Source of the DNA: Salpingoeca rosetta
Taxonomy: Eukaryota > Protista > Choanoflagellata
Reading direction: 5' to 3'
DNA length: 64,000 bases
Assembly: GCA_033442325.1 (NCBI GenBank)
Contig: JAWQFM010000029.1
Location: forward strand, 59,066-123,065
The translations under genes and the position numbers were made by a program. The notes under the pieces are model-generated. The model made no database searches, was not told the origin of the DNA, and saw only the letters and a list, made by a program, of their open reading frames with translations. Of this stretch, positions 1 to 64,000 are shown piece after piece; position 1 is the stretch's first letter, and the number at the start of each line of letters is the position of its first letter.

Positions 1-2
1 TT

Positions 3-3000
3 GTGTCGTTTGTTGGCGCTGATGCGACGTTTGGGGGAAGCCTGGAGGCCACGGACGATGGCCAGGGCTCGTTGCGTCTCGGTGGTGTTGTGTCTTCGAG
101 CGGCGTTGGCGGGAGCGCTGCTGCCATTGCTCACGTTACGTTCCAGGCCGTCAGCGCTGGCGCGTTTGTGGTTGAGGGCGCGGTGACGGACTTGTTGGAC
201 CGCCAGCTTCCATCGCAACCGATTGTGGCGGGCCTGCCGTCTGCGGTTGTTGCTGGACGCGTGTGGATTTCGGTCACCGGTGCCGACGGTGGAGAGCAGC
301 AGAGACGAAGGCGTTCGGGGGTGCGGCTGCCGGTACCACCACCCCAGTCCCTGGCGCAGCCACGGCGGCGGCGCAACGCAGACAGCGACCCGTTTGCAAG
401 TGCAGCGGACGTGGACGGCGATGGGCGGTTCACAATTGGAGACGCGTTCTTCACGCTGCGGTATGTGGTGCTGGAGACGCAAGAGTTTGCCGGGGCGGAC
501 GGAGCGGCGGTGCAGGCCATTCTGGCCGAGGACCCCCGGCGACGCAGCGCACTCGACGCAGACCGGGACGGCACTGTGCGTCTGCGCGACAGCAGGCTGC
601 AGAGCCAAGTAGCCACTGGCAAAGCGGTGTTCCTCGGCAGCATCCCAGGCGTGGACGTTGCCGTAAACCAAGACACGTCAGCATGTGGCGTTTCCGTGAG
701 CGCAACTGTGTTTGAGCCTGGCCTTGGCGGAGCTGCTGCCTCCTCGACACGGGTGTTTGTGTTGGTTGATGGGCTTGCGCAAGACGGGGGCACAACCGCC
801 ACCCTGCTATCGCTGCCTGGCACTGGCACTGGCATTGATGTGGCACAGCTGTCACCGGCTCTGTCCGACGCTGTCGCTGTGTACGGCAGCGAGCCTGGGG
901 CGCAGGCTGTGCTGCTCGAGGCTGTGCCATCAAATGCAAGTGCACCCGTGAGCGCTGTGTACACGGCTCTCTTGCCACCTGCTGTGGATACGCAGCTCAT
1001 TGGCGTGTCGGTGTTTGCGGTTGTGTCACGTGGTGTGCGGACGTACGCAACGTTCTTCGGCAACCAGGCAACGACGGGTGCGCCTGTCGTGCCCTCAAGG
1101 CGCACCGAGACTGTGCGCGCATTTGCCAACGCAGACGTGGACGCCGCAGTCCTAGATACGGGGCTTGATTCTGGCTACAACCCCCTCACCACCGCAGCCC
1201 TCAACAACACGCGCGCGCAGCAGTATTGTATCCGACAATGCGTGGCCACGGGCGACGATGTCGTGTCTGCCTACTTTTACAACACGACCGCGTTCACGTG
1301 TGTTTCCACCAGCACATGCGACACGCTGAGTGAGTACGAAAGTGAGCCAGCAACGAGCACAAGCAACAGAGAATGTGAGCCGCTGAGAGCTTGTGACGCA
1401 GCAACAGAGTACGAGACGGCAGCACCAACAGCAACGTCTGATCGCACCTGTGCCAACGTCACAGCGTGTGATGCAGCTACAGAGTACGAGACGGCAGCAC
1501 CAACAGCAACGTCTGATCGCACCTGTGCCAACGTCACAGCTTGTGACGCAGCAACAGAGTACGAGACGGCAGCACCAACAGCAACGTCTGATCGCACCTG
1601 TGCCAACGTCACAGCGTGTGATGCAGCTACAGAGTACGAGACGGAAGCACCAACAGCAACGTCTGACCGCACCTGTGCCAACGTCACAGCGTGTGACGCA
1701 GCAACAGAGTACGAGACGGCAGCACCAACAGCAACGTCTGATCGCACCTGTGCCAACGTCACAGCGTGTGATGCAGCTACAGAGTACGAGACGGAAGCAC
1801 CAACAGCAACGTCTGACCGCACCTGTTCCAACGTCAACACTTGCAGCATCGAGCAATACGAGACGGCAGCACCAACAGCAACGTCTGACCGCACCTGTGC
1901 CAACGTCACGTCTTGTGCAGGTGACCAGTACGAGATAGCAGCACCAACAGCAACGTCTGACCGCACGTGCGCCAACGTCACAGCGTGTGATGCAGCAACA
2001 GAGTACGAGACGGCAGCACCAACAGCAACGTCTGACCGCACGTGCGCCAACGTCACAGCGTGTGATACAGCAACACAGTACGAGATAGCAGCACCAACAG
2101 CCACGTCTGATCGCACCTGTTCCAACGTCAACACTTGCAGCATCGAGCAATACGAGACGGCAGCACCAACAGCCACGTCTGACAGAGAGTGCGCCAATCT
2201 CACTGTGTGCGATCCAGTCACGCAGTTCCAAGCAACTGCACCAACAGCCACATCCGACAGGCTTTGCGCGAACTTGACTTCTAGTTCAACTCAGAGTCCA
2301 ACAGCAGCTGCTGCTATTGCTTCTGTTCAAATTCCGGAAGCATCAAACCTTGGGCTAGCTGTGTCTGTGCTTGGCGCCCTTGTGTGTTGTTTTGGTTTGG
2401 TTCGGACGGTTCGTACACCAGTGTGGCCACTGTTTCTTTCACTCGCTCTGTGCCACGTGTACTTCGGCGTTGAGTCCGTTGCACTGTCCGACGACATTTC
2501 GTTTTCTCTTGTTGCGGACCGGTGCCTCGCCCTCGGCGCTTTCAAGCTTGCGCTTTCATTGAGTTGTCTCTGGTAAGATTGCTGATGGGATGATGTGTCC
2601 AGTTCACCTTGTGCCTGCATTTGATTCGCTATGTGTTACTCACTTTCTCCACTTGCTTCTTTCGCTAGCTGGCTTGGTGCATGCGTCCTTCAGTCGTCCA
2701 CCGACATCAATCCTTTCACGTTGCGTCCTCTCGGGCTCTTTGCCATCGTCTGCGGTCAGTGCGCTCCTAGTGCAGCTTTGAGTGTTTGTTCCAAGCAGTG
2801 TAGAGCCTAGGTCCACGCGCCTGCTGTACTCACCAACATTACTTTGCTATCCGCCTACAGCCATTCCAATCACAACTGCTGTTGCCCTCGTCGCTGCCGC
2901 GCCGTCCTCATTTGGAGCGTCGACCGGCTGGTAAGTGTATTGGAGGTGTTGCACCACATGAAACGATCAACTGCGCGTGGGTGTGGGCCGTCGCTGTGCC

Positions 3001-3857
3001 AACTTTACTCACACCAGGTACGCCTTGCTCGCTTCGCTTTTGACAGGTGTGACCTCCATCAACCGCTAGCACGAGGCCTCGCTGGTATTCTGGCGTCCTG
3101 TACTCTGGGCTTTTCCCCGCTGATTTACGCGAGCATACGACGCATCCGTCACCGCCGCCAGTTCTTCATGGGCGACATTGTTGATGATTTGTTTGGGAAC
3201 GAGTCTCGCATCCAGCGGCCGTTGCTGGCTGCTGCCATCCTCCTCGTTGTCGCCAACCGCGTCTCACTCAACCTTCCAGTGCATCTGAGTGTGGATGACG
3301 ATATTCCAGAGCACATGCCAGTGGTGAACGTCATGTGTGCGGTTGCGTTGACGGCGGTGTCCCTGGTCTTCTTGTGCACGCGTCTTGGTCGATCAGATAA
3401 CAACGGCAGCAACAAGGGCGGTCTTGCTGGATATGCTTCACCCAACAACAGTGGAGACCCATCCAAATTCGTTCATTTGAACACCATGCCTGCAGATGAT
3501 GTTCCACGCAGCTTTGTCAGCCGCATTAGCAAACGAGGCGCGTTCTCGCCTTCAACACCCGCTCACCTACCAGGCAGCATCAGCAGGAGCATGCTGACTT
3601 CCTTCCGTTATCTTCCACGGTACGAAAATGACAGCAGTTCTGACGATGTGTCAGGCATGAGTATCTCGGACAAAGTGCACGAGGACGTCAGTGGCATTCA
3701 CGAGGATACATCTTCCTCTTCGATTCTAAGAGGTTTGACGTCACTGGACATTAGCGATGGGGGGGAATCGATCGACTTGTTCCCAGTTGCAATCGATCGA
3801 CAGGAGGTTGAGAACGCCGATGTGGAAAGTATTGAGGACAATGTTGTTGTGGTTTGA
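3..3857 (+). CDS. Adhesion/secretin-family (7tm_2-like) GPCR, 5'-partial: cohesin-like segment, dockerin-like domain, Cys-rich repeat stalk, 7TM, cytoplasmic tail
   Basis: ORF 3..2576 is open from the window edge. It continues by GT-AG splicing: ~2572|2669 gives LSCL-CWLGACVL, ~2753|2861 gives AIPITTAVALVAAAPSSFGASTG, and ~2930|3047 gives WCDLHQPLARGLAG to the stop at 3857. TM1 LGLAVSVLGALVCCFGL, TM2 LFLSLALCHVYF and TM3 CLALGAFKLALSLSCLCWL resemble family-B C..IA...HYFFLASFFWM. The ECL2 Cys is present. Confidence 0.75.
1317..2280 (+). repeat. Coding tandem repeat, 13 x ~75 bp (CDAATEYETAAPTATSDRTCANVTA), TNFR-module-like with N-glycosylation sequons
   Basis: Directly visible in DNA and protein. 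Two Cys per unit, an NVT/NLT sequon in most units, near-identical DNA copies. Confidence 0.95.
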
Positions 3858-4181
3858 ATGCTTTGCGGTGACGTTTTTGAAGATCACGAGTGTGTACTGG
3901 TGTGCTTTCTGAATTGTAACGTGCGCTGTGTTACCTTCTAATAAATATGACCTTGTTTTCAGTTGACTGACACGCATGACAGACATGCTACAACGAAATT
4001 TCTTCCAAATTCATAAAACCAAAGCAAGCAAAACCAATGCAGAACCGCTTGAATGTTGAATGTTACGAGGACAGCCAGTGTTCCTGCATTGACTCACTGT
4101 GTGTGATGGCACTCAATGATTTCTAAGATCCAGCATGTTGTAGACAGGGTAGAGTGCATCACATGGAATTCACTGCCATTC

Positions 4182-4767: not shown

Positions 4768-7700
4768 AACTTCCGCGGCCACTGCGCGCAGCAGTGCCGC
4801 AAGCTGCAGGCGGCCAAGCGCTACCACGTCATCGACGTGCGGCAGATCCTGGCTACGCTTCGCAACCACGGCAACGGCAACGGCAAGCGGCCAGGATCCT
4901 CTCGCCCGCAGCACGGACGAGCAGCTCCATTCAAGAAGGCGGCCGTCGTCAGCCACGGCCCTCAGCGCATGGAGACCTTCGCCATCCACCACGATGCCCT
5001 CATGCTGCAGCCCGAGGGCGAGGAGGAGGGCCACGCCATCGGACCAATGCCACCACAGCTGTGGCTCGCTGACAGCGGTGCCACGGCGCACATCACCAGC
5101 GACGCCTCCCTCCTCACCAACTACATCGCCGTCACGCAGCACGTCACCGTTGCCAACAGCCAGGCCGTCACGGTCATCGGCAAGGGCGACGCCGTGCTCC
5201 GCGTGACTGGCACCGACGGCGCTCCAGGCACCATCACGCTGAAGAACGTGCTGCATGTCCCCGACATCAAGTACAACCTTTGGCGCTGAACCCTGGTGAC
5301 TCGCGCGCGTCGGGTGCTTCCGTCGTCATTGCTGCGGACGACGAGCCGCATCCCAGGTTGCCACATGGAGCGGGCTCTGCTGCCGTCTCAAGGACACGGG
5401 CCATCTCTCCTCTACGCCAGTGGCACTAACTTCCCAACAAGCCACGGCGCTTGCGGGGAGCTCGTGCACAGCAGCGATGGGGAAGCCGAGGATGCTGACG
5501 AGGGCGCCTCTGCACACGACGTGCTAGGCATCGCAGCAGCGCGGCCGTCGACGCCATCCGGCAGCAGATCGCCAGGCCTCTTCCAAGCACATCGTTACCT
5601 GTGGACCATGTTGCGCTTGGCAAGAGCACGCCGCGCCTCCATCCCGAAGCAGTCTGCTCCACGTAGCGCTGGGCCATGCCAGCTGCTCTACGCCGACATC
5701 GCCGGTCCGCTGGAGGAGACGTCGCTGCGAGGTGCACGCTACGCGCTGACCTTCATCGACGACTGCACGCGCTTTGCCTGGACGTTTCTCATCCGGCACA
5801 AGAACGAGGTCGGTGCGGCCCTGGAGCAACTGCGCAAGGACCGTCACGTCGTCAACGCCACGCTGCAGACGGATAGCGACGCCGTCTTCAAGAGCCAGGA
5901 CTTCACCGACCTGTGCCTGGCCTTCGACATCAAGCAGCGCTTCTCGCCACCGCACTCGCAGGCCAAGAACGGATCCGCGGAGCGCACTTTCCGCACCCTC
6001 TTCGAGACGGCGCGTACGATGCTGTTTGCTGCGGACCTGGACAAGCCGTTCTGGGGCTTCGCCGTGCAGCACGCCACGCTGCTGCACAACATCGCGCCAC
6101 GCAGGAGCCTCAAGGACAAGTCACCGTTCGAGGCCCTGACTGGGCACCCCTTTGACGTCAGCCTGTTGCGCGTCTTCGGCTCGCCGGCCTACGTGCATGT
6201 GGAGAAGAGCAGCACGCGGCACAAGCTTGACCCACGCTCACGCGTTGGCGTCTACGTCGGCTTCGCTGAGGAGGACCAGGCCCACGTCGTCTGGATGCCG
6301 GACACGCGACGCGTTGTCCACACCATCCACGCTCGCTTCGGCGCCATCAAGAACAAGGACGCCGTCTCCTCTCAGCAGCAGCAAGAGCAGAACAGCGGTG
6401 CCTCTGCTTCGCATGCCAACAAGACCGCTCAGCGTTCGACCGAGGACAGTGCCACCGGCGCTCCCCCTGCACCACGTGCGGGGGAGCCGCAGCTCCAGCC
6501 ACGCGCCCTTGGCGGCTCCGTCTGGGACCAGCTGCTGTTGTCTGAGACCCTCGGCGACAAGGACACCTCTGGTGGCTCAACCACCACGTGTCACGTTGCC
6601 ACCAGCGCTGCTGGTACGGGGGAGAAGACATCAGCAGTGGGTGGTCATCTACCAGACATCGCTGCTGGCAGTTTTGCCACGTCAGCTGAGCCAGCCACCG
6701 TCAAGGAGGCGCTTGCCTCGCCAGACTCTGAGGAGTGGCGCCAAGCCATCCTGGACGAGTTTGCGGCAATGCAGGCCAATGACGTCTACGACGTCGTGCC
6801 TCGCGCTGACCTTCCCAAGGGCCAGAAGGTGCTCCACAGCATGGTCATCTTTCGGAGGAAGCGCGATGACCAGGGCAAGGTAATCAAGTACAAGGCGCGC
6901 TGGGTTGCCAAAGGCTACTCCCAGGTCCACGGTGTCAACTACACGGACACCTTTGCTCCGACGGCTACCATCGCAGCCATCCGCACCATGCTCGCCATGG
7001 CCGTCGCGCGTGGCATGAACGTCCAGCAGATGGACGTCAACACGGCGTTCCTCAACGCGCCCGTGGATCACGAGATCTACGTCCAGCCACCGGCCGTCGA
7101 CGGCATCTTCTCGCCGAATACGGTGCTGCGCCTCAAGCGTGGGCTGTATGGGCTGAAGCAGAGCCCGCGCCTGTGGAACCACACGCTGGACGCCTGGATG
7201 CGCGAGCAGGACTTCGTCGCTACAGCCACGGACGCCTGCATCTACCGCCGCACCTGCAAGGGTGGCAAAGTGATGTGGGTTGCCGTCTACGTGGACGACC
7301 TGCTCATCTTCGCCGACAGCGACAGCGACATGGCCGCCTTCAAGAAGGCCATCTCCAAGCGCTTCAAGATGAAGGACCTGGGCAGCCCAGACATATGTCT
7401 CGGCATCAAGGTGCAGCACAACCGCAAGGCCAGGACCGTCACCATGAGCCAGGAGCACTACCTGCGCAACGTGCTGGAGGCCTTCGGCATGGCTGACTGC
7501 AAGCCTGTCGGCACGCCGCTCTGCACGGGCTACGTCGACAAGCCAGCCGACAAGGAGGAGCCACTGCCGGATGTGCCGTTCCGCGAGCTGCTTGGCTCCC
7601 TCCTCTATGCTGCGACGATGACGCGCCCAGACATCTCGGCGGCTGTCTCCATCCTGTCTCGCCGCATGCAGCACTTCGGCATGGACCACTGGAAGGCTGC

Positions 7701-8809: not shown

Positions 8810-11800
8810 AGCCGGCTGCTCCAAGACACAAGACAGCCGTTGATGTAGCAGGTGAAGCCCGTCGTGGAGCGGCCCGTCAGCTGGTCTGTTCCGAAGCTGG
8901 CATCGCTGTAGCACACAAGGTTCAGCGGCTGGTCTTTGCACGTGCCGCTGCGTCGCTTGAAGAGGAGGCCGTGCTCGCTCGTCGCCTTCAGGTACCGCAC
9001 GACGTGCTTGGCTGCCTGCCAGTGGACCGTCGTGTAACGGTCCATGTAACGGCAGAGCAGTCCGCACGCGAAGCTGACGTCTGGTCTCGTGCGGTTGGCC
9101 AGGTACAGGAGCGAGCCGACGAGGTTGCGGAAAGGCAGGCGTCGGTCGGGCTGCTCGCTGATGCTGGAGGCGTCGATGCCAACACGCATGGGCGTGGAGA
9201 CGCTGGCTGCCGCTGCCAGGTTGTAGTCGTTGACGATGTCGTTGATGGCCTGTGTCTGCGTAATGTGCAACACCCCGTCAGCTGGTGACGTCAGGTGAAG
9301 GCCCAGGTACCAGGTGAGCGGGCCCAGGTCCTCTGCCTCGAAGCTCTCCTTGATCTGCTGCTTGCAGGCACGGATGTGACGCTCGCTGCTGCTGCTGATG
9401 ATGAGGTCGTCAACGTACGTGATGATCCATGTGCGCTGTCCGTCGTCGTGGAGCTTGGTGAAGAGGCAGGCGTCGACATTGCTCTGCGCCCATCCGTTGG
9501 TCTTGAGGAAGGTGTGCAGCTTCTTGGCCCATGCACGGCCAGCTTGCTTGAGGCCGTACAGCGGCTTGAACAGCCGGCACACCTTGCCCGCGTAGCGTTG
9601 AGCGCCGTCGCCGATGTCGGTGAAGTGCGGCGGCAGCTCCATGTACAGCTCCTCCTTGAGATCAGCCTGCAGGTAAGCCGACTTGAAGTCGAGCTGGTGC
9701 AGCTGGTGCTGTCGTTGCAGGGAGACGGCGAGCACAGTGAGGATGGTCTTGGCTGCTGGTGTTGGGGCGTAGGTCTGGTCGAAGTCGATGCCCGGTCGTT
9801 GGCTGAAGCCCTTGGCGACCCAGCGTGCCTTGAAGCGCGTCGGCGCGCCCTCAGCGTCACGCTTCACCTTGAAGACGAAGCGTGACTTGAGAGGCGTGTG
9901 CTGTCGTGGCACGGCGCTGCGTGGGATGAGCTTGATGACGCCGTTGCGCTCCATGGCCCCGATCTCCTCCAAGCATGCCTGAGTCCACTGCTTGCGTTGC
10001 TGGCTCTTGAGTGCCTGCTTGATGCTTTGCAGGCTCCGTGAGGCTGTTGTCGTCTCTGCTGCTTGCTGTGAACGCGCCTGTCTCGGGGACGCTTGTTTCT
10101 GTTTTTGTCGTGTTTCGTAGTTGGCGTCGTNNNNNNNNNNNNNNNNNNNNNNNNNNNNNNNNNNNNNNNNNNNNNNNNNNNNNNNNNNNNNNNNNNNNNN
10201 NNNNNNNNNNNNNNNNNNNNNNNNNNNNNNNNNNNNNNNNNNNNNNNNNNNNNNNNNNNNNNNNNNNNNNNNNNNNNNNNNNNNNNNNNNNNNNNNNNNN
10301 NNNNNNNNNNNNNNNNNNNNNNNNNNNNNNNNNNNNNNNNNNNNNNNNNNNNNNNNNNNNNNNNNNNNNNNNNNNNNNNNNNNNNNNNNNNNNNNNNNNN
10401 NNNNNNNNNNNNNNNNNNNNNNNNNNNNNNNNNNNNNNNNNNNNNNNNNNNNNNNNNNNNNNNNNNNNNNNNNNNNNNNNNNNNNNNNNNNNNNNNNNNN
10501 NNNNNNNNNNNNNNNNNNNNNNNNNNNNNNNNNNNNNNNNNNNNNNNNNNNNNNNNNNNNNNNNNNNNNNNNNNNNNNNNNNNNNNNNNNNNNNNNNNNN
10601 NNNNNNNNNNNNNNNNNNNNNNNNNNNNNNNNNNNNNNNNNNNNNNNNNNNNNNNNNNNNNNNNNNNNNNNNNNNNNNNNNNNNNNNNNNNNNNNNNNNN
10701 NNNNNNNNNNNNNNNNNNNNNNNNNNNNNNNNNNNNNNNNNNNNNNNNNNNNNNNNNNNNNNNNNNNNNNNNNNNNNNNNNNNNNNNNNNNNNNNNNNNN
10801 NNNNNNNNNNNNNNNNNNNNNNNNNNNNNNNNNNNNNNNNNNNNNNNNNNNNNNNNNNNNNNNNNNNNNNNNNNNNNNNNNNNNNNNNNNNNNNNNNNNN
10901 NNNNNNNNNNNNNNNNNNNNNNNNNNNNNNNNNNNNNNNNTCGACGATGACGAGGCTGTAGCGCTTGCCCGTGGGTGAGTCCGCGTCCAGTCGACGAGTC
11001 GGCGTGGATGCGCTCGCCGGGCACCTGTGTGCGCTCCGCGTGCTTGCTGACGCTGTGACGAGTGCTCTTGGTCACTGCGCACGTTGTACACTGCTTGCTG
11101 CTGATGGCGTTGCGATGTCGATGCCCATCAGCTTGCAGTACTGCTGCACGTCGTTGTCGTTGCGGTGACCAAGCACCTCATGCATCGATGGTGTGTGCGC
11201 CTTGCTCTGGGATGCAGGAACTGCTGCGGGTTGCTGTGGTTGCTTGCAGGCATCGGCGGTGAGACCGTGTGCCGTGGATGGACCAACAGCAACAATGGGC
11301 CAGCACCGGAGGCTGTTGCGCTCCTTCAGCTTGACCTCGGCTCCGTGGCTGAAGCGCACGTAGTGCCCATCAGCGCCATCACGCTGCGAGTGGCCCGTTG
11401 GCCTGCCGCTGCTGTCCCTGGTCAGACGACCGAGGGCGATGAGGTTGGCCTGGCCCTCGGGCACGTAGAGGCACTCCTGTAGCACAATCTGCATCGTGGC
11501 TCCGCTCGTCGTGCGTGCATGCAACAGCACAGAGCCAACACCGCGCACGGGCACACGTGTGCCGCCAAACGCAGTGATGTGGCGTGGATGGTGCTGTTGC
11601 AGGTGCGGTGTCAGCTCCACGAAGGCGTCCTTGACGAAGGTGAGGTGGTGTGAAGCACCAGTGTCTACAAGCCACGTGAGTGGGTCATGCAGCTGCGTGG
11701 GTGTAGTAGCTGTGGCAGCGACGAAGGTTGCTGCGTCTTGACCATGTTGATGCTGTGCCTGTGCAGTGAAGCCTGTTGCTCCGTTGTCGCGTTGCTTCTT

Positions 11801-12638
11801 GCGACACTCTGCTGCACGGTGTCCATACTTGCCACAGTAGTGACAGTTGCCACGGAAGCGGCGCCCCTTGCTGTTGCTGTTGCCGTTACCACCGTTGTTG
11901 CGTCCCTGGCGTCCGTGGTTGTTGCTGCTGTTGGAGAAGCCGCGTCTTCCACCTCTGCGTGGCGGTGCTCTTGCCACGAAGCCGCCTGCCTGCGGCTGTG
12001 TGCGTGAACCACGCATCTGCTGCTCCAGCTGCTGCAGCCTGATGCTGAGCTCGAGGAGGGAGGGAAAGCGGCCACTGGCAAAGTAGGGAAGCGTGAGCGG
12101 GGGCTGTCCAGCGTGGCAGCTGCTTCCAGACGATGGTGAAGAGGTCCTCGTTGTCCTGGCGCACGCCCGCGTCCTGCAACTGCTGCTGCAGCTCCATGTG
12201 TCGCTCGAAGAAGCGGGCCAGGTTGCCGCAGGGGACGTGAAGCTGCGCCTCCTTGAGCTCTGCGATGCGGAGGCGGTCCTGCGAAGCGTAGTGGTCCTTG
12301 AGCCGGGCCCATCCTTGGCCGGCGTTGACGTCTGCTTCTCCGTTGGTGAAGAGGAGAAGGGGGTAGCCTGAGAGCGTGGACGCGATGAGGTTTGCAGCGG
12401 TGAGGTTGGCGTGATCTCCTGCTGTCGGTCTCCTTGCACTTGAGCGTGTCGCTGAGCTTGGACCTCCCGATGACGATGCTCCTGCCTCCACAGCTGCCCA
12501 GACGTCGTCGCCGCGCAGCTTGAGCGCCATCTTCATGCGAATGCTCCACGCATGAAAGGTGCCGGGCGAGCCAGAGAACTTGGGCAGGTCCATCTTGAAT
12601 CCTGGCGTGGAAACGACGTGGTCCGACGGGTCAGACAT
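8810..12638 (-). mobile_element. Ty1/copia gag-pol (family A), frameshifted, with an internal gap
   Basis: Gag MSDPSD..LPKFSG; zinc knuckle CHYCGKYGHRAAEC; protease WLVDTGASHH; integrase Zn finger HEVLGH..CTTC; RT FKARWVAKGFSQ, LYGLKQAGRAW, YVDD; RNase H CYSDASF..RSTTGF. Frameshifts near 12100 (C run) and ~11100. Confidence 0.95.
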
Positions 12639-61626: not shown

Positions 61627-62234
61627 GAATGTGTGTGAAAGTGAGGTGTGATCGTGCGATGAGTGCAGGTGCAGCTCATATGCCGGCCAAACTGTCTGCC
61701 GACCACCGTGACCAACGCGAGAAGGATAGCGCAAATCCCCCTCTCCTGTATCCAAAGTCCACAACTCGATCGCGTGCGGGGTTGACCTACAAGGTTTCGA
61801 CGGGCTTGCCATGATGAGCGGCGAATAAAAGGCGGGCAAGCAAGCAGCAAGGCGGGAGAATGAGCTCCTCCTCTCCCCGCTCTCTGCCTCGCTTGGAGTC
61901 CGCGCTCCTGTCGCTGGTTGCTGGTTGGTTGCTGGTTGGTGCGCTGTTGTGGACACTTCCGCAACCAAGGAAGCGAGGGAGGGGGAAGGTGAAGAGTGTT
62001 GGCTGGGGCGTGGTATGCAAGCAACCACCGCTTGCGTTTGATTGGTCGTTGTTGATTGGTGGTGTTGTTGTGTAGGACAGCAGCAGTCAAACGTGTGCGA
62101 AAAAAGCAAAACTCGCACGTCCCGTCAGGGTCGACTGAATTCAGCCTTGATTGAAGTCAGTTGCCACAGTTGACGAGTCAGTGGAGAGGTGGAGAAAGCG
62201 AAAGAGAGTTGCTTCAACCACACACACACACACA

Positions 62235-62328
<94 letters not shown>

Positions 62329-63306
62329 ACACACGCGCACACCCCAAGATACTAGGGGTGTGAGGGGCGCCGAGGCGGTGGAGGCATGGGGGGAACTGCC
62401 CCCTTCTCACGCTACAACCAGGACTTTGAACATGCGTGTCACCCGGGGGGGGGGGGGGGGGNNNNNNNNNNNNNNNNNNNNNNNNNNNNNNNNNNNNNNN
62501 NNNNNNNNNNNNNNNNNNNNNNNNNNNNNNNNNNNNNNNNNNNNNNNNNNNNNNNNNNNNNNNNNNNNNNNNNNNNNNNNNNNNNNNNNNNNNNNNNNNN
62601 NNNNNNNNNNNNNNNNNNNNNNNNNNNNNNNNNNNNNNNNNNNNNNNNNNNNNNNNNNNNNNNNNNNNNNNNNNNNNNNNNNNNNNNNNNNNNNNNNNNN
62701 NNNNNNNNNNNNNNNNNNNNNNNNNNNNNNNNNNNNNNNNNNNNNNNNNNNNNNNNNNNNNNNNNNNNNNNNNNNNNNNNNNNNNNNNNNNNNNNNNNNN
62801 NNNNNNNNNNNNNNNNNNNNNNNNNNNNNNNNNNNNNNNNNNNNNNNNNNNNNNNNNNNNNNNNNNNNNNNNNNNNNNNNNNNNNNNNNNNNNNNNNNNN
62901 NNNNNNNNNNNNNNNNNNNNNNNNNNNNNNNNNNNNNNNNNNNNNNNNNNNNNNNNNNNNNNNNNNNNNNNNNNNNNNNNNNNNNNNNNNNNNNNNNNNN
63001 NNNNNNNNNNNNNNNNNNNNNNNNNNNNNNNNNNNNNNNNNNNNNNNNNNNNNNNNNNNNNNNNNNNNNNNNNNNNNNNNNNNNNNNNNNNNNNNNNNNN
63101 NNNNNNNNNNNNNNNNNNNNNNTTTTCATTTTTTTTTGTTTGTAGGCTAGATGTTATTTTCTTCTACACCAATTACGTTTTGCTTCTCTCCACGCGATAC
63201 CCCACATAAACGCACATTACTCACACCCCAACTACAATATCCATACTAATCTCACATATATTGTTTCTTTTTTCGTTCAGGATGGGGGTGAGTTTAGTGA
63301 CACAGA

Positions 63307-63380
<74 letters not shown>

Positions 63381-63553
63381 ACACACCCACACACCTGAAG
63401 ATGCGAGGGTTGCGAGGGCGGGGGGGGGGGGGGGGCAGGGGGGTTCTCCCCCTTCCACACCCCAACCAGGAATTGAAGGGGCGTGGGGGGGGGGGGGGGG
63501 GGGGTTTGCATGTGTGTGTTTGTGTGTGTTTGTGTGTGTGTGCGTGTGTTTGC

Positions 63554-63633
<80 letters not shown>

Positions 63634-63736
63634 TCTCTTGTTGCTTGCATGCTCACACGTGCTCACGCGCATCACCAACCCCAACAACCACCGTCGCCAT
63701 CTCATCACGCCGCTTGCCCAGACACCTCCGAGTCGA

Positions 63737-64000
63737 ATGTCCTGCAAGCAGTCAACGGCACTGGTTGTGGTCGGCGTGGTCGCTGCCATCTTCATCACAG
63801 TGCAGGCCCTCGCCTTCTTTGAATTCTCCTCATCATCCGCCAATGTGGACTTGCACACGCACTTCCAGCAGCAACAACACCACGAGCAGCAGGGGCACCA
63901 CACAGACCAAAACCAACAGATGCACGAGCCACACCAGCAGGCACACGGCGACACAGATGGCTTCAAGGACAAAACAGATCACGGGCAGCAGGGTGTGCCA
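63737..64000 (+). CDS. 5' end of a probable type II membrane protein (Golgi-enzyme-like topology), 3'-partial
   Basis: MSCKQSTALVVVGVVAAIFITVQALAFFEF followed by a Q/H-rich stem; the frame stays open to the window edge. Confidence 0.5.
   Translation, partial: MSCKQSTALVVVGVVAAIFITVQALAFFEFSSSSANVDLHTHFQQQQHHEQQGHHTDQNQQMHEPHQQAHGDTDGFKDKTDHGQQGVP

What the first reader, a model, noticed from the sequence alone, without database searches (positions are those of the whole stretch)
3..620. Cohesin-like and dockerin-like modules separated by twin furin-type sites in a 7TM receptor: a possible GAIN-free cleaved-and-rejoined adhesion receptor
Seen: a beta-rich segment (LRLGGVV..AIAHVTFQAV..VVEGAVTDL), then QRRRRS (303-314) and PRRRRN (363-374), then two Ca2+-loop/helix motifs, ADVDGDGRFTIGDAFFTLRYVV (from ~408) and LDADRDGTVRLRD (from ~555). 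Established: dockerins are paired DxDGDGxxxxxD-helix motifs that bind cohesins with high mechanical strength in bacterial cellulosomes; RxxR/RxRR is the proprotein-convertase consensus; animal adhesion GPCRs stay heterodimeric after GAIN autoproteolysis. Inference: convertase cleavage could leave the distal ectodomain tethered by a Ca2+-dependent cohesin-dockerin clasp. That would be a convergent force- or Ca2+-sensitive release switch, or an exchangeable cellulosome-like docking system on a eukaryotic surface. The cohesin call is the weaker one because the domain is cut by the window edge.
Basis: partly seen in the sequence, partly recalled or inferred. Interest (0 to 1): 0.88.

Follow-up and report, generated by a model that had tools for sequence, protein, structure and literature searches.

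The report
Cohesin, twin cleavage sites, dockerin joint
A giant surface receptor of the choanoflagellate Salpingoeca rosetta carries a bacterial-type cohesin and dockerin side by side, joined by a loop with two conserved protease-cutting sites. The same unit recurs in hundreds of choanoflagellate and sponge adhesion proteins, so the protein is probably cut and then held together by a calcium clasp.

Summary
The finding lies in one 8.4 kb exon of an expressed gene for a 3035 aa protein with a signal peptide, two arrays of TNFR-like Cys repeats and seven C-terminal membrane helices.

- **Cohesin:** the beta segment matches Pfam at 24.7 bits (cut-off 24.1), and the best Foldseek hits of the model are almost all solved cohesins.
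- **Dockerin:** the two Ca loops form a divergent dockerin. This copy scores 19.2 bits, below the 22.9 cut-off; paralogues and orthologues score 33-37.
- **Cleavage sites:** the two RRRR motifs are the only R-x-[KR]-R sites in 2650 aa of ectodomain.
- **Conservation:** the genome has at least 14 such cassettes at about 22% identity. The invariant residues are four Arg of the two sites and four Ca-loop Asp.
- **Spread:** 194 cassettes from 143 proteins, including several choanoflagellates and a sponge Fat4-like cadherin, mostly keep both sites.
- **Contact:** cohesin and same-cassette dockerin covary at the predicted canonical interface. Complex score 0.71, best control 0.01.
- **Enzyme:** the genome encodes furin/kexin-type convertases.

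Cleavage and binding are inferred, not shown. The 7TM domain is an orphan, with no GAIN domain and no Pfam match. The scan noted paralogous cassettes of this genome before (s1-432388 and others).

The parts
1..296 (+). Cohesin module, C-terminal two thirds. The module begins about 150 nt upstream of the window, at G000:C29 about 58918.
   Evidence: Pfam PF00963 scores 24.7 bits against a cut-off of 24.1 on the isolated segment, and 24.3 bits in the genome scan. The AF2 model has pLDDT 80-88 here. The best Foldseek PDB hits are almost all cohesins, e.g. 5nrm_A at E 1.8e-7, with target TM-scores mostly 0.6-0.73.
303..314 (+). Polybasic site 1, RRRR followed by Ser (proprotein-convertase type)
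   Evidence: R151-R154 are invariant or nearly invariant across 15 paralogous cassettes. A [KR]R dibasic is present here in 166 of 194 cassettes, against 1.4% of 12-aa windows in the folded parts.
315..362 (+). Connecting peptide between the two sites (16 aa, Pro-rich, variable in relatives)
   Evidence: pLDDT is about 41 and no secondary structure is predicted. Length and sequence are not conserved.
363..374 (+). Polybasic site 2, RRRR followed by Asn (R-x-R-R type)
   Evidence: R171, R173 and R174 are invariant in 15 paralogues. Across 194 cassettes Arg occupies P1 in 87%, P2 in 76% and P4 in 74%.
378..638 (+). Dockerin-like module with two Ca-binding loops (408-443 and 555-590), each followed by a helix
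   Evidence: Pfam PF00404 scores 19.2 bits, below the 22.9 cut-off. Paralogues score 33.6 and relatives from other organisms 32.8-36.6. D11, D22, D60 and D71 are invariant. Profile search of PDB ranks dockerins first. pLDDT is 84-90.
639..1215 (+). Conserved beta domain after the dockerin, of unknown family, part of the cassette
   Evidence: It aligns across paralogues and 143 database proteins, up to profile position about 450. It has no Pfam hit and pLDDT about 50-60.
1227..2280 (+). Membrane-proximal array of about 13 near-identical 26-aa TNFR-like Cys repeats
   Evidence: Seen in the translation. TNFR_c6 gives a weak hit here and a strong one in the orthologue-like P0041.
2340..3857 (+). 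Seven-helix membrane domain and cytoplasmic tail. Exons end at 2572 and then span 2669-2754, 2861-2930 and 3047-3857, with the stop at 3855-3857.
   Evidence: Hydropathy shows seven peaks. Splice joints are supported by 29-52 reads each in two RNA runs. The result is identical to the annotated protein P0001.

Best explanation
The window begins inside a conserved 'cohesin - basic site - connecting peptide - basic site - dockerin' cassette in the ectodomain of a 3035 aa Salpingoeca rosetta surface protein. That protein ends in an orphan seven-helix membrane domain. The likely sequence of events is as follows. In the secretory pathway the dockerin folds back onto the cohesin of its own cassette through the canonical cohesin-dockerin face, loaded with Ca2+. 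A furin/kexin-type convertase then cuts at one or both R-x-R-R sites and removes the 16 aa connecting peptide, much as the C-peptide is removed from proinsulin. The mature receptor would then be two chains: a distal fragment of about 1950 aa ending in the cohesin, and a membrane fragment beginning with the dockerin. Only the non-covalent Ca2+-dependent clasp would hold them together. Such a joint could part under force or on Ca2+ loss, shedding the distal ectodomain. This resembles Notch S1 and GAIN or SEA cleavage in function but not in ancestry.

Shown here: the domain identities, the conservation of the sites, the predicted contact with covariation, expression, and the presence of the enzyme genes. 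Inferred: cleavage, persistence of the heterodimer, and any release switch.
For: - **Cohesin:** supported by Pfam and by fold.
- **Dockerin:** invariant Ca-loop Asp residues, and dockerins as best PDB profile hits.
- **Sites in this protein:** the only two R-x-[KR]-R motifs of the 2650 aa ectodomain lie in the disordered linker.
- **Sites in paralogues:** in 15 cassettes at 20-27% identity the invariant columns are four Arg of the two sites and four Ca-loop Asp.
- **Sites in the wider family:** of 194 cassettes in 143 proteins, 147 keep a dibasic at both sites, against 1.4% of background windows. The residues after the cut are small or polar, mostly S, A, Q, N or D.
- **Taxa:** carriers include Barroeca, Hartaetosiga, Codosiga, S. 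macrocollata and the sponge Sycon ciliatum.
- **Predicted binding:** the own cohesin with the own dockerin scores 0.71, best of 3 controls 0.01. That mark was reached by 51 of 78 solved complexes and 2 of 108 mismatched pairs. The runs agree in at least 98% of contacts, and partner pLDDT is 84.
- **Covariation:** signal between the cohesin and the same-cassette dockerin is concentrated at that interface. Ten of the top 25 MIp pairs fall in a set holding 3.9% of all pairs, with Mann-Whitney p 8e-9. The top pair is a size swap, G-F against V-A, A-V or L-A.
- **Enzyme:** a gene with Peptidase_S8 plus P-domain, and three further P-domain loci.
- **Secretion and expression:** signal peptide; the gene is transcribed and the cassette is unspliced.
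Against: - No protein-level data exist: cleavage and heterodimer stability are untested.
- The complex score may partly reflect memory of solved cohesin-dockerin complexes, and its calibration held no riding ligand.
- Covariation shows contact between the modules of one cassette. It cannot say whether the chain is cut.
- This copy's dockerin is below the Pfam cut-off. It also lacks the Cys pair at profile positions 193 and 206, which 139 of 194 cassettes have.
- Some relatives have a single long poly-Arg, or only KR, at one site.
- The spacing between the two Ca loops (49 aa) is longer than in bacterial dockerins as I recall them.
Confidence: 0.5

Rival explanations
1. The cohesin and dockerin form a permanent intramolecular structural unit. 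The basic motifs are either not cut, or are cut only to release or shed the distal part for good, so there is no regulated cut-and-clasp state.
For: The contact evidence holds equally for an uncut chain. Some cassettes have one site only.
Against: The two sites are the most conserved linker features in an otherwise free-varying, disordered loop. That pattern is hard to explain without a sequence-specific enzyme. Keeping a tight binding pair on both sides of a cut suggests the pair matters after cutting.
Confidence: 0.22
2. After cleavage the modules act in trans, as in a cellulosome. Cohesins bind dockerins of other molecules or other cassettes, building exchangeable or homophilic surface assemblies.
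For: The genome has at least 16 cohesins and many dockerins in at least 9 giant genes, some with three or more cassettes. Bacterial cohesin-dockerin pairs work in trans (established knowledge).
Against: Covariation is between the cohesin and dockerin of the same cassette, which fits matched pairs rather than free exchange. It cannot exclude pairing between two copies of the same protein.
Confidence: 0.15
3. The Ca loops are an ordinary EF-hand pair, or the beta domain is a generic Ig-like fold, and the resemblance to cellulosome modules has no functional meaning.
For: This copy's Dockerin_1 score (19.2 bits) is below the cut-off. EF-hand models also give weak hits, and calmodulins appear at E about 2e-5 in the PDB profile search.
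Against: Dockerins outrank calmodulins in that search. Paralogues and orthologues pass the Dockerin_1 cut-off. The best fold matches of the beta domain are almost all cohesins. Interface covariation is present.
Confidence: 0.05

Closest known systems
Bacterial and archaeal type I cohesin-dockerin pairs (cellulosome; e.g. PDB 1ohz, 2ccl, 5nrm)
   Same: The fold of the beta module is the same. The duplicated Ca-loop and helix segments have their best sequence matches to solved dockerins. The predicted contact uses the dockerin loop-helix segments against one sheet of the cohesin.
   Different: Here the two modules sit next to each other in one eukaryotic polypeptide, joined by a cleavable loop. 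The loop-to-loop spacing is longer. Most copies carry an extra Cys-rich lead-in (PPCxxC) and a Cys in the first Ca loop. No enzymes or cellulose are involved.
Cohesin-bearing cadherins of choanoflagellates and sponges (coherins, lefftyrins, hedglings) and the TMEM132 architecture (PMC6030884)
   Same: Same lineage and same super-module. Ig_TMEM132_4th, 5th and 6th domains lie upstream of the cohesin in relatives and weakly in this protein. Many carriers are giant cadherins.
   Different: This protein has no cadherin repeat. The cited paper calls the partner of the eukaryotic cohesin unclear and reports no vertebrate dockerin. In its main text as searched here it does not mention the adjacent dockerin or the basic sites. 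I could not read Peer 2009, Abedin and King 2008 or Nichols 2012.
Receptors cut in the secretory pathway and held together non-covalently: Notch S1 (furin), FAT1, adhesion-GPCR GAIN, mucin SEA (established knowledge, not tested here)
   Same: The proposed logic is the same: a cut ectodomain with two fragments kept together, which may separate under force.
   Different: The holding device is a cohesin-dockerin pair, not an HD, GAIN or SEA fold. Two sites flank an excisable peptide. No tethered agonist is evident.
Proinsulin C-peptide excision by PC1/3 and PC2 (established knowledge)
   Same: Two basic sites flank a variable connecting peptide between two parts that stay associated.
   Different: In insulin the association is by disulfides. 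Here it would be by a Ca2+-dependent protein-protein interface.

Membership tests
Cohesin (Pfam PF00963) | Sequence match at or above the family cut-off (24.1 bits) | tested here: met
   24.7 bits on the isolated 200 aa segment and 24.3 bits in the genome scan. The pass is borderline: 18.9-22.1 bits when scored inside longer queries. Ten of 15 paralogues match, best E 1.1e-12.
Cohesin (Pfam PF00963) | Beta-sandwich fold like solved cohesins | tested here: met
   The best Foldseek PDB matches of the AF2 model are almost all cohesins, at E 1.8e-7 to 1e-5 and target TM-scores mostly 0.6-0.73.
Cohesin (Pfam PF00963) | Binds a dockerin | tested here: inconclusive
   Computational support only: ipSAE 0.71 against a best control of 0.01, and interface covariation.
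Dockerin type I (Pfam PF00404) | Sequence match at or above the family cut-off (22.9 bits) | tested here: not met
   This copy scores 14.5-19.2 bits. Paralogues reach 33.6 and relatives 24.3-36.6.
Dockerin type I (Pfam PF00404) | Two Ca-binding loops with conserved Asp, each followed by a helix | tested here: met
   D11, D22, D60 and D71 are invariant in 15 paralogues and 99-100% conserved in 194 cassettes. Helices follow each loop in the model, at pLDDT 84-90.
Dockerin type I (Pfam PF00404) | Closer to dockerins than to other EF-hand-like proteins | tested here: met
   In the PDB profile search, dockerins 2ccl_B, 4fl4_A, 1ohz_B and 4dh2_B score E 2.3e-7 to 1e-6; calmodulins score about 2e-5 or worse. 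The margin is modest.
Proprotein-convertase (furin/kexin) substrate | R-x-[K/R]-R motif in an exposed region of a secretory-pathway protein | tested here: met
   Two RRRR motifs lie in a linker with pLDDT about 41. P0001 has a signal peptide.
Proprotein-convertase (furin/kexin) substrate | The enzyme is present in the organism | tested here: met
   Four P-domain loci over the cut-off. L026 has Peptidase_S8 and P_proprotein in one reading frame.
Proprotein-convertase (furin/kexin) substrate | Cleavage observed | not testable with these tools
   Needs protein work. A convertase cuts after Arg, just as trypsin does, so ordinary tryptic proteomics cannot show it.
Adhesion GPCR | GAIN/GPS domain next to the 7TM | tested here: not met
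   No GPS or GAIN hit. Only about 25 aa lie between the last Cys repeat and TM1.
Adhesion GPCR | Family B (7tm_2) membrane domain | tested here: not met
   No Pfam family at E up to 1, no homologue and no paralogue. The language-model neighbours are Dicty_CAR and 7tm_2 clusters, which is a lead only. The single-sequence fold is poor, pLDDT 46.
Coherin-type cadherin | Cadherin repeats together with a cohesin | tested here: not met
   No cadherin hit in the 2812 aa exon product. Relatives P0004, P0010, P0020 and P0036 do have cadherin repeats.

The most novel reading that the evidence does not exclude
The cohesin - twin convertase sites - dockerin cassette is an ancient joint, older than animals, that is cut and then held together non-covalently. 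It is shared by choanoflagellate receptors and sponge Fat-like cadherins. It would act as a force-sensitive or Ca2+-sensitive release point, independent in origin from GAIN, SEA and the Notch HD domain. It would also identify the original partner of the cohesin-like domain that survives in animal TMEM132 proteins.
Probability: 0.35. Interest if true: 0.85.

Novelty: new variant of a known kind. Interest (0 to 1): 0.72.

Why it matters
Cohesin domains in choanoflagellate and sponge cadherins have been known since 2008-2012, and TMEM132 was linked to them in 2017. Their binding partner in eukaryotes, however, was left open (PMC6030884).

This work gives a direct answer for the pre-animal proteins: the partner is the dockerin next door. 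Covariation supports the pairing, and two conserved convertase sites lie in between. That turns a domain annotation into a testable mechanism for how giant adhesion receptors at the root of animals are processed and might sense force or calcium.

It also offers an independently evolved counterpart to GAIN, SEA and Notch-type cleavage. S. rosetta now has endogenous tagging and western-blot assays for receptor processing (bioRxiv 10.64898/2026.06.27.734982), so the test is practical.

Tried and rejected
- **7TM domain.** Pfam gave nothing. A search with the 406 aa C-terminal piece gave nothing. A search of the own genome gave only the gene itself. The single-sequence AF2 model had pLDDT 46 and was too poor for a fold search. 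Language-model neighbours (Dicty_CAR and 7tm_2 clusters) are leads only. The class of the 7TM stays open.
- **Post-dockerin domain.** Pfam on window 600-1300 gave no family.
- **Link to TMEM132.** Scans of the 15 cassettes matched only Cohesin, Dockerin_1, TNFR_c6 and EGF-type families, with no TMEM132 family among them. The link to animal TMEM132 therefore rests on the upstream Ig_TMEM132 domains and on the literature.
- **Papers not held.** Peer 2009 and Nichols 2012 could not be read, so I cannot exclude that the adjacency of cohesin and dockerin in Monosiga proteins was already noted there. Searches for dockerin together with Monosiga or Salpingoeca found nothing relevant. The choanoflagellate GPCR catalogue does not mention cohesin, dockerin, TNFR or TMEM132.
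- A first brute-force splice enumeration was uninformative; canonical sites and RNA reads replaced it. L010 was read in the wrong frame and left out of A1. The z-score version of the covariation test had undefined values at invariant columns; the MIp version is the clean one.
Full report
**Where the finding sits.** The window is G000:C29:59066-123065 of a 55.4 Mb, 68-contig eukaryotic genome. A 487 aa stretch of Salpingoeca rosetta PTSG_03507 (P0067, named) matches contig C7 at 100% identity, so the genome is S. rosetta. The finding lies in a single open exon of 2812 codons that starts 5.9 kb upstream of the window (L003:138-8576). The annotated product P0001 has 3035 aa. In order it contains:
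- a signal peptide and a Cys-rich head;
- a long array of 26-aa TNFR-like Cys repeats;
- about 900 aa of Ala/Thr/Val-rich beta domains, with sub-threshold Ig_TMEM132_4th and 5th hits;
- the cohesin, the linker, the dockerin and a further beta domain;
- a second TNFR-like array;
- seven hydrophobic helices and an acidic tail.

**Expression and gene model.** Two stranded RNA-seq runs cover window 1-3900 from the + strand RNA at depths of about 4-240. They show no joint inside 1-650. They confirm three GT..AG introns (2573-2668, 2755-2860, 2931-3046) with 29-52 reads each. This reproduces my model and P0001.

**The observation.** Every quoted motif is present within a few bases of the stated places.
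- **Cohesin:** PF00963 scores 24.7 bits against a cut-off of 24.1 on the isolated segment and 24.3 bits in the genome scan. The AF2 model built on 15 paralogues has pLDDT 80-88 over the beta module. Its best Foldseek matches in the PDB are almost all cohesins, at E 1.8e-7 and up, with target TM-scores mostly 0.6-0.73.
- **Dockerin:** Dockerin_1 scores 19.2 bits at best for this copy, below the 22.9 cut-off. A profile of the cassette nevertheless finds solved dockerins as its best PDB hits (2ccl_B at 2.3e-7), then cohesins, with calmodulins an order of magnitude or two weaker. The four Ca-loop Asp residues are invariant.
- **Basic sites:** the two RRRR motifs are the only R-x-[KR]-R sites in 2650 aa of ectodomain, where shuffles expect 0.016 RRRR. 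They lie in a stretch with no predicted structure, pLDDT about 41.

**It is a recurrent cassette.** The genome has 16 cohesin hits over the cut-off, in giant reading frames. Some frames hold three hits spaced about 5 kb apart. Several are followed 250-300 nt later by a Dockerin_1 hit, and 14 loci match a whole cassette. Nearly every locus shows RRRR about 25-50 aa after the cohesin match, a second R-x-R-R 20-40 aa further on, and then a Ca loop. In the alignment of 15 cassettes (A1, 20-27% identical to this one) the invariant columns are R152, R171, R173, R174 and the four loop Asp. R151, R153 and R154 are at least 90% conserved.

**Spread outside the genome.** A profile of A1 finds 10,711 proteins at E up to 1e-3 and 375 at E up to 1e-30 among 1.84 billion representatives. 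Most of the best 150 match the whole profile, often two to six times in proteins of 4000-8000 aa. The named ones are choanoflagellates (Barroeca monosierra, Hartaetosiga gracilis, Codosiga hollandica, Salpingoeca macrocollata and other S. rosetta genes) and the sponge Sycon ciliatum, where the carrier is a Fat4-like cadherin. Many carriers are cadherins with Ig_TMEM132 domains.

Among 194 cassettes from 143 proteins:
- 166 have a dibasic at site 1, 159 at site 2 and 147 at both, against 1.4% of 12-aa windows in the folded parts;
- 88 and 123 respectively have the full R-x-[KR]-R motif;
- Arg at P1 of site 2 is 87% conserved;
- the residue after the cut is mostly S, A, D, E, Q or N.

The sponge copy reads RRRRS ... 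RHRRS ... PPCAVC ... GDTNGDC.

**Do the two modules touch?** The own cohesin and own dockerin, folded as separate chains with two Ca ions, scored 0.71, 0.71 and 0.69, with a best control of 0.01. That mark was reached by 51 of 78 solved complexes and 2 of 108 mismatched pairs. The runs agree in at least 98% of contacts and partner pLDDT is 84. The tool warns that a pass in a family with solved complexes may come from memory, and that its calibration held no riding ligand. The interface uses dockerin residues 13-28 and 72-82, which are the two loop-helix segments, against one sheet of the cohesin.

As an independent check I computed corrected mutual information (MIp) between cohesin and dockerin columns over 193 cassettes (effective number 185).
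- The 340 pairs of the predicted interface, 3.9% of all pairs, score higher than the rest (Mann-Whitney p 8e-9).
- The two strongest pairs of all, and 10 of the top 25, are interface pairs.
- The strongest is a size swap: G with F against V-A, A-V, L-A or I-A.
- Column entropies of interface and other positions are alike. Random column sets of the same size never reached the observed count (maximum 7 against 11 in the top 50). That version has a caveat about undefined values at invariant columns.

So each cohesin is matched to the dockerin of its own cassette. This does not tell whether the chain is cut, nor whether pairing is within one molecule or between two copies of the same protein.

**The enzyme.** The genome has four proprotein-convertase P-domain loci over the cut-off. 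One has Peptidase_S8 and the P-domain in a single frame.

**Most likely mechanism.** The dockerin docks on its neighbouring cohesin. A convertase then cuts at the flanking sites and removes the variable connecting peptide. The receptor becomes two chains held by a Ca2+-dependent clasp that force or Ca2+ loss could open. I put about 0.8 on a true cohesin-dockerin pair in contact, about 0.6 on cleavage, and about 0.5 on the whole chain of inference.

The rivals are:
- a permanent uncut structural unit, or a cut that only sheds the distal part (0.22);
- trans or exchangeable docking (0.15);
- a chance resemblance of an EF-hand pair (0.05).

**Compared with what is known.** Cohesin domains in choanoflagellate and sponge cadherins, and their kinship with TMEM132, are published (PMC6030884). 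That paper leaves the partner open and reports no vertebrate dockerin. I found no paper in the held library that describes the adjacent dockerin or the basic sites, but three key older papers were not available.

The protein is not an adhesion GPCR by definition. It has no GAIN/GPS domain and no 7tm_2 match, and its 7TM is an orphan. It has no cadherin repeat either, so it is not a coherin. It works like the cut-and-held receptors (Notch S1, FAT1, GAIN, SEA) but uses a different holding device. I rate it a new variant of known kinds.

**Earlier notes of the scan.** First readers flagged paralogous cassettes of this genome (s1-432388, s1-433367, s1-432499, s1-432604, s1-436240). One follow-up agent reached the same reading for another copy. 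My scores rest on the tests above.

Noticed in passing
window 1227-2280 and L003:400-3100: There are two arrays of near-identical 78-nt (26-aa) TNFR-like Cys repeats. RNA reads map to more than one place here: 'goes back' joints at 2150->2004, and loose ends at 2245 that match the end of the upstream array. The annotated protein P0001 lacks about 200 aa of repeats that are present in the assembly's open frame.
   Followed up: partly
profile positions 193 and 206 of the cassette (absent at window about 390-425): A Cys before the dockerin (PPCxxC) and a Cys inside the first Ca loop (GDxNGDC) occur together in 139 of 194 cassettes and are both absent in 20, this copy included. They probably form a disulfide that staples the new N-terminus to the loop.
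   Followed up: partly
window 2340-3390: The seven-helix membrane domain has no Pfam match, no detectable homologue of 223-710 aa, and no paralogue in the genome. Only P0002, a 43%-identical relative, shares its first helices.
   Followed up: partly
window about 4780-6500: Downstream of the gene lies a retroelement-like open frame. It has an integrase-like stretch and a broken frame, and reads like a Ty1/copia-type element. Seen by eye only.
   Followed up: no
window 10001-12000 and 62001-64000: Two 2 kb stretches have G+C of about 0.36, against 0.53-0.65 elsewhere.
   Followed up: no
G000:C6:1970367-1980404 and G000:C7:2027135-2037622: Giant reading frames of 6104 and 6844 codons each carry three cohesin cassettes spaced about 5 kb apart, which makes a repeating super-module of about 1600 aa.
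   Followed up: partly
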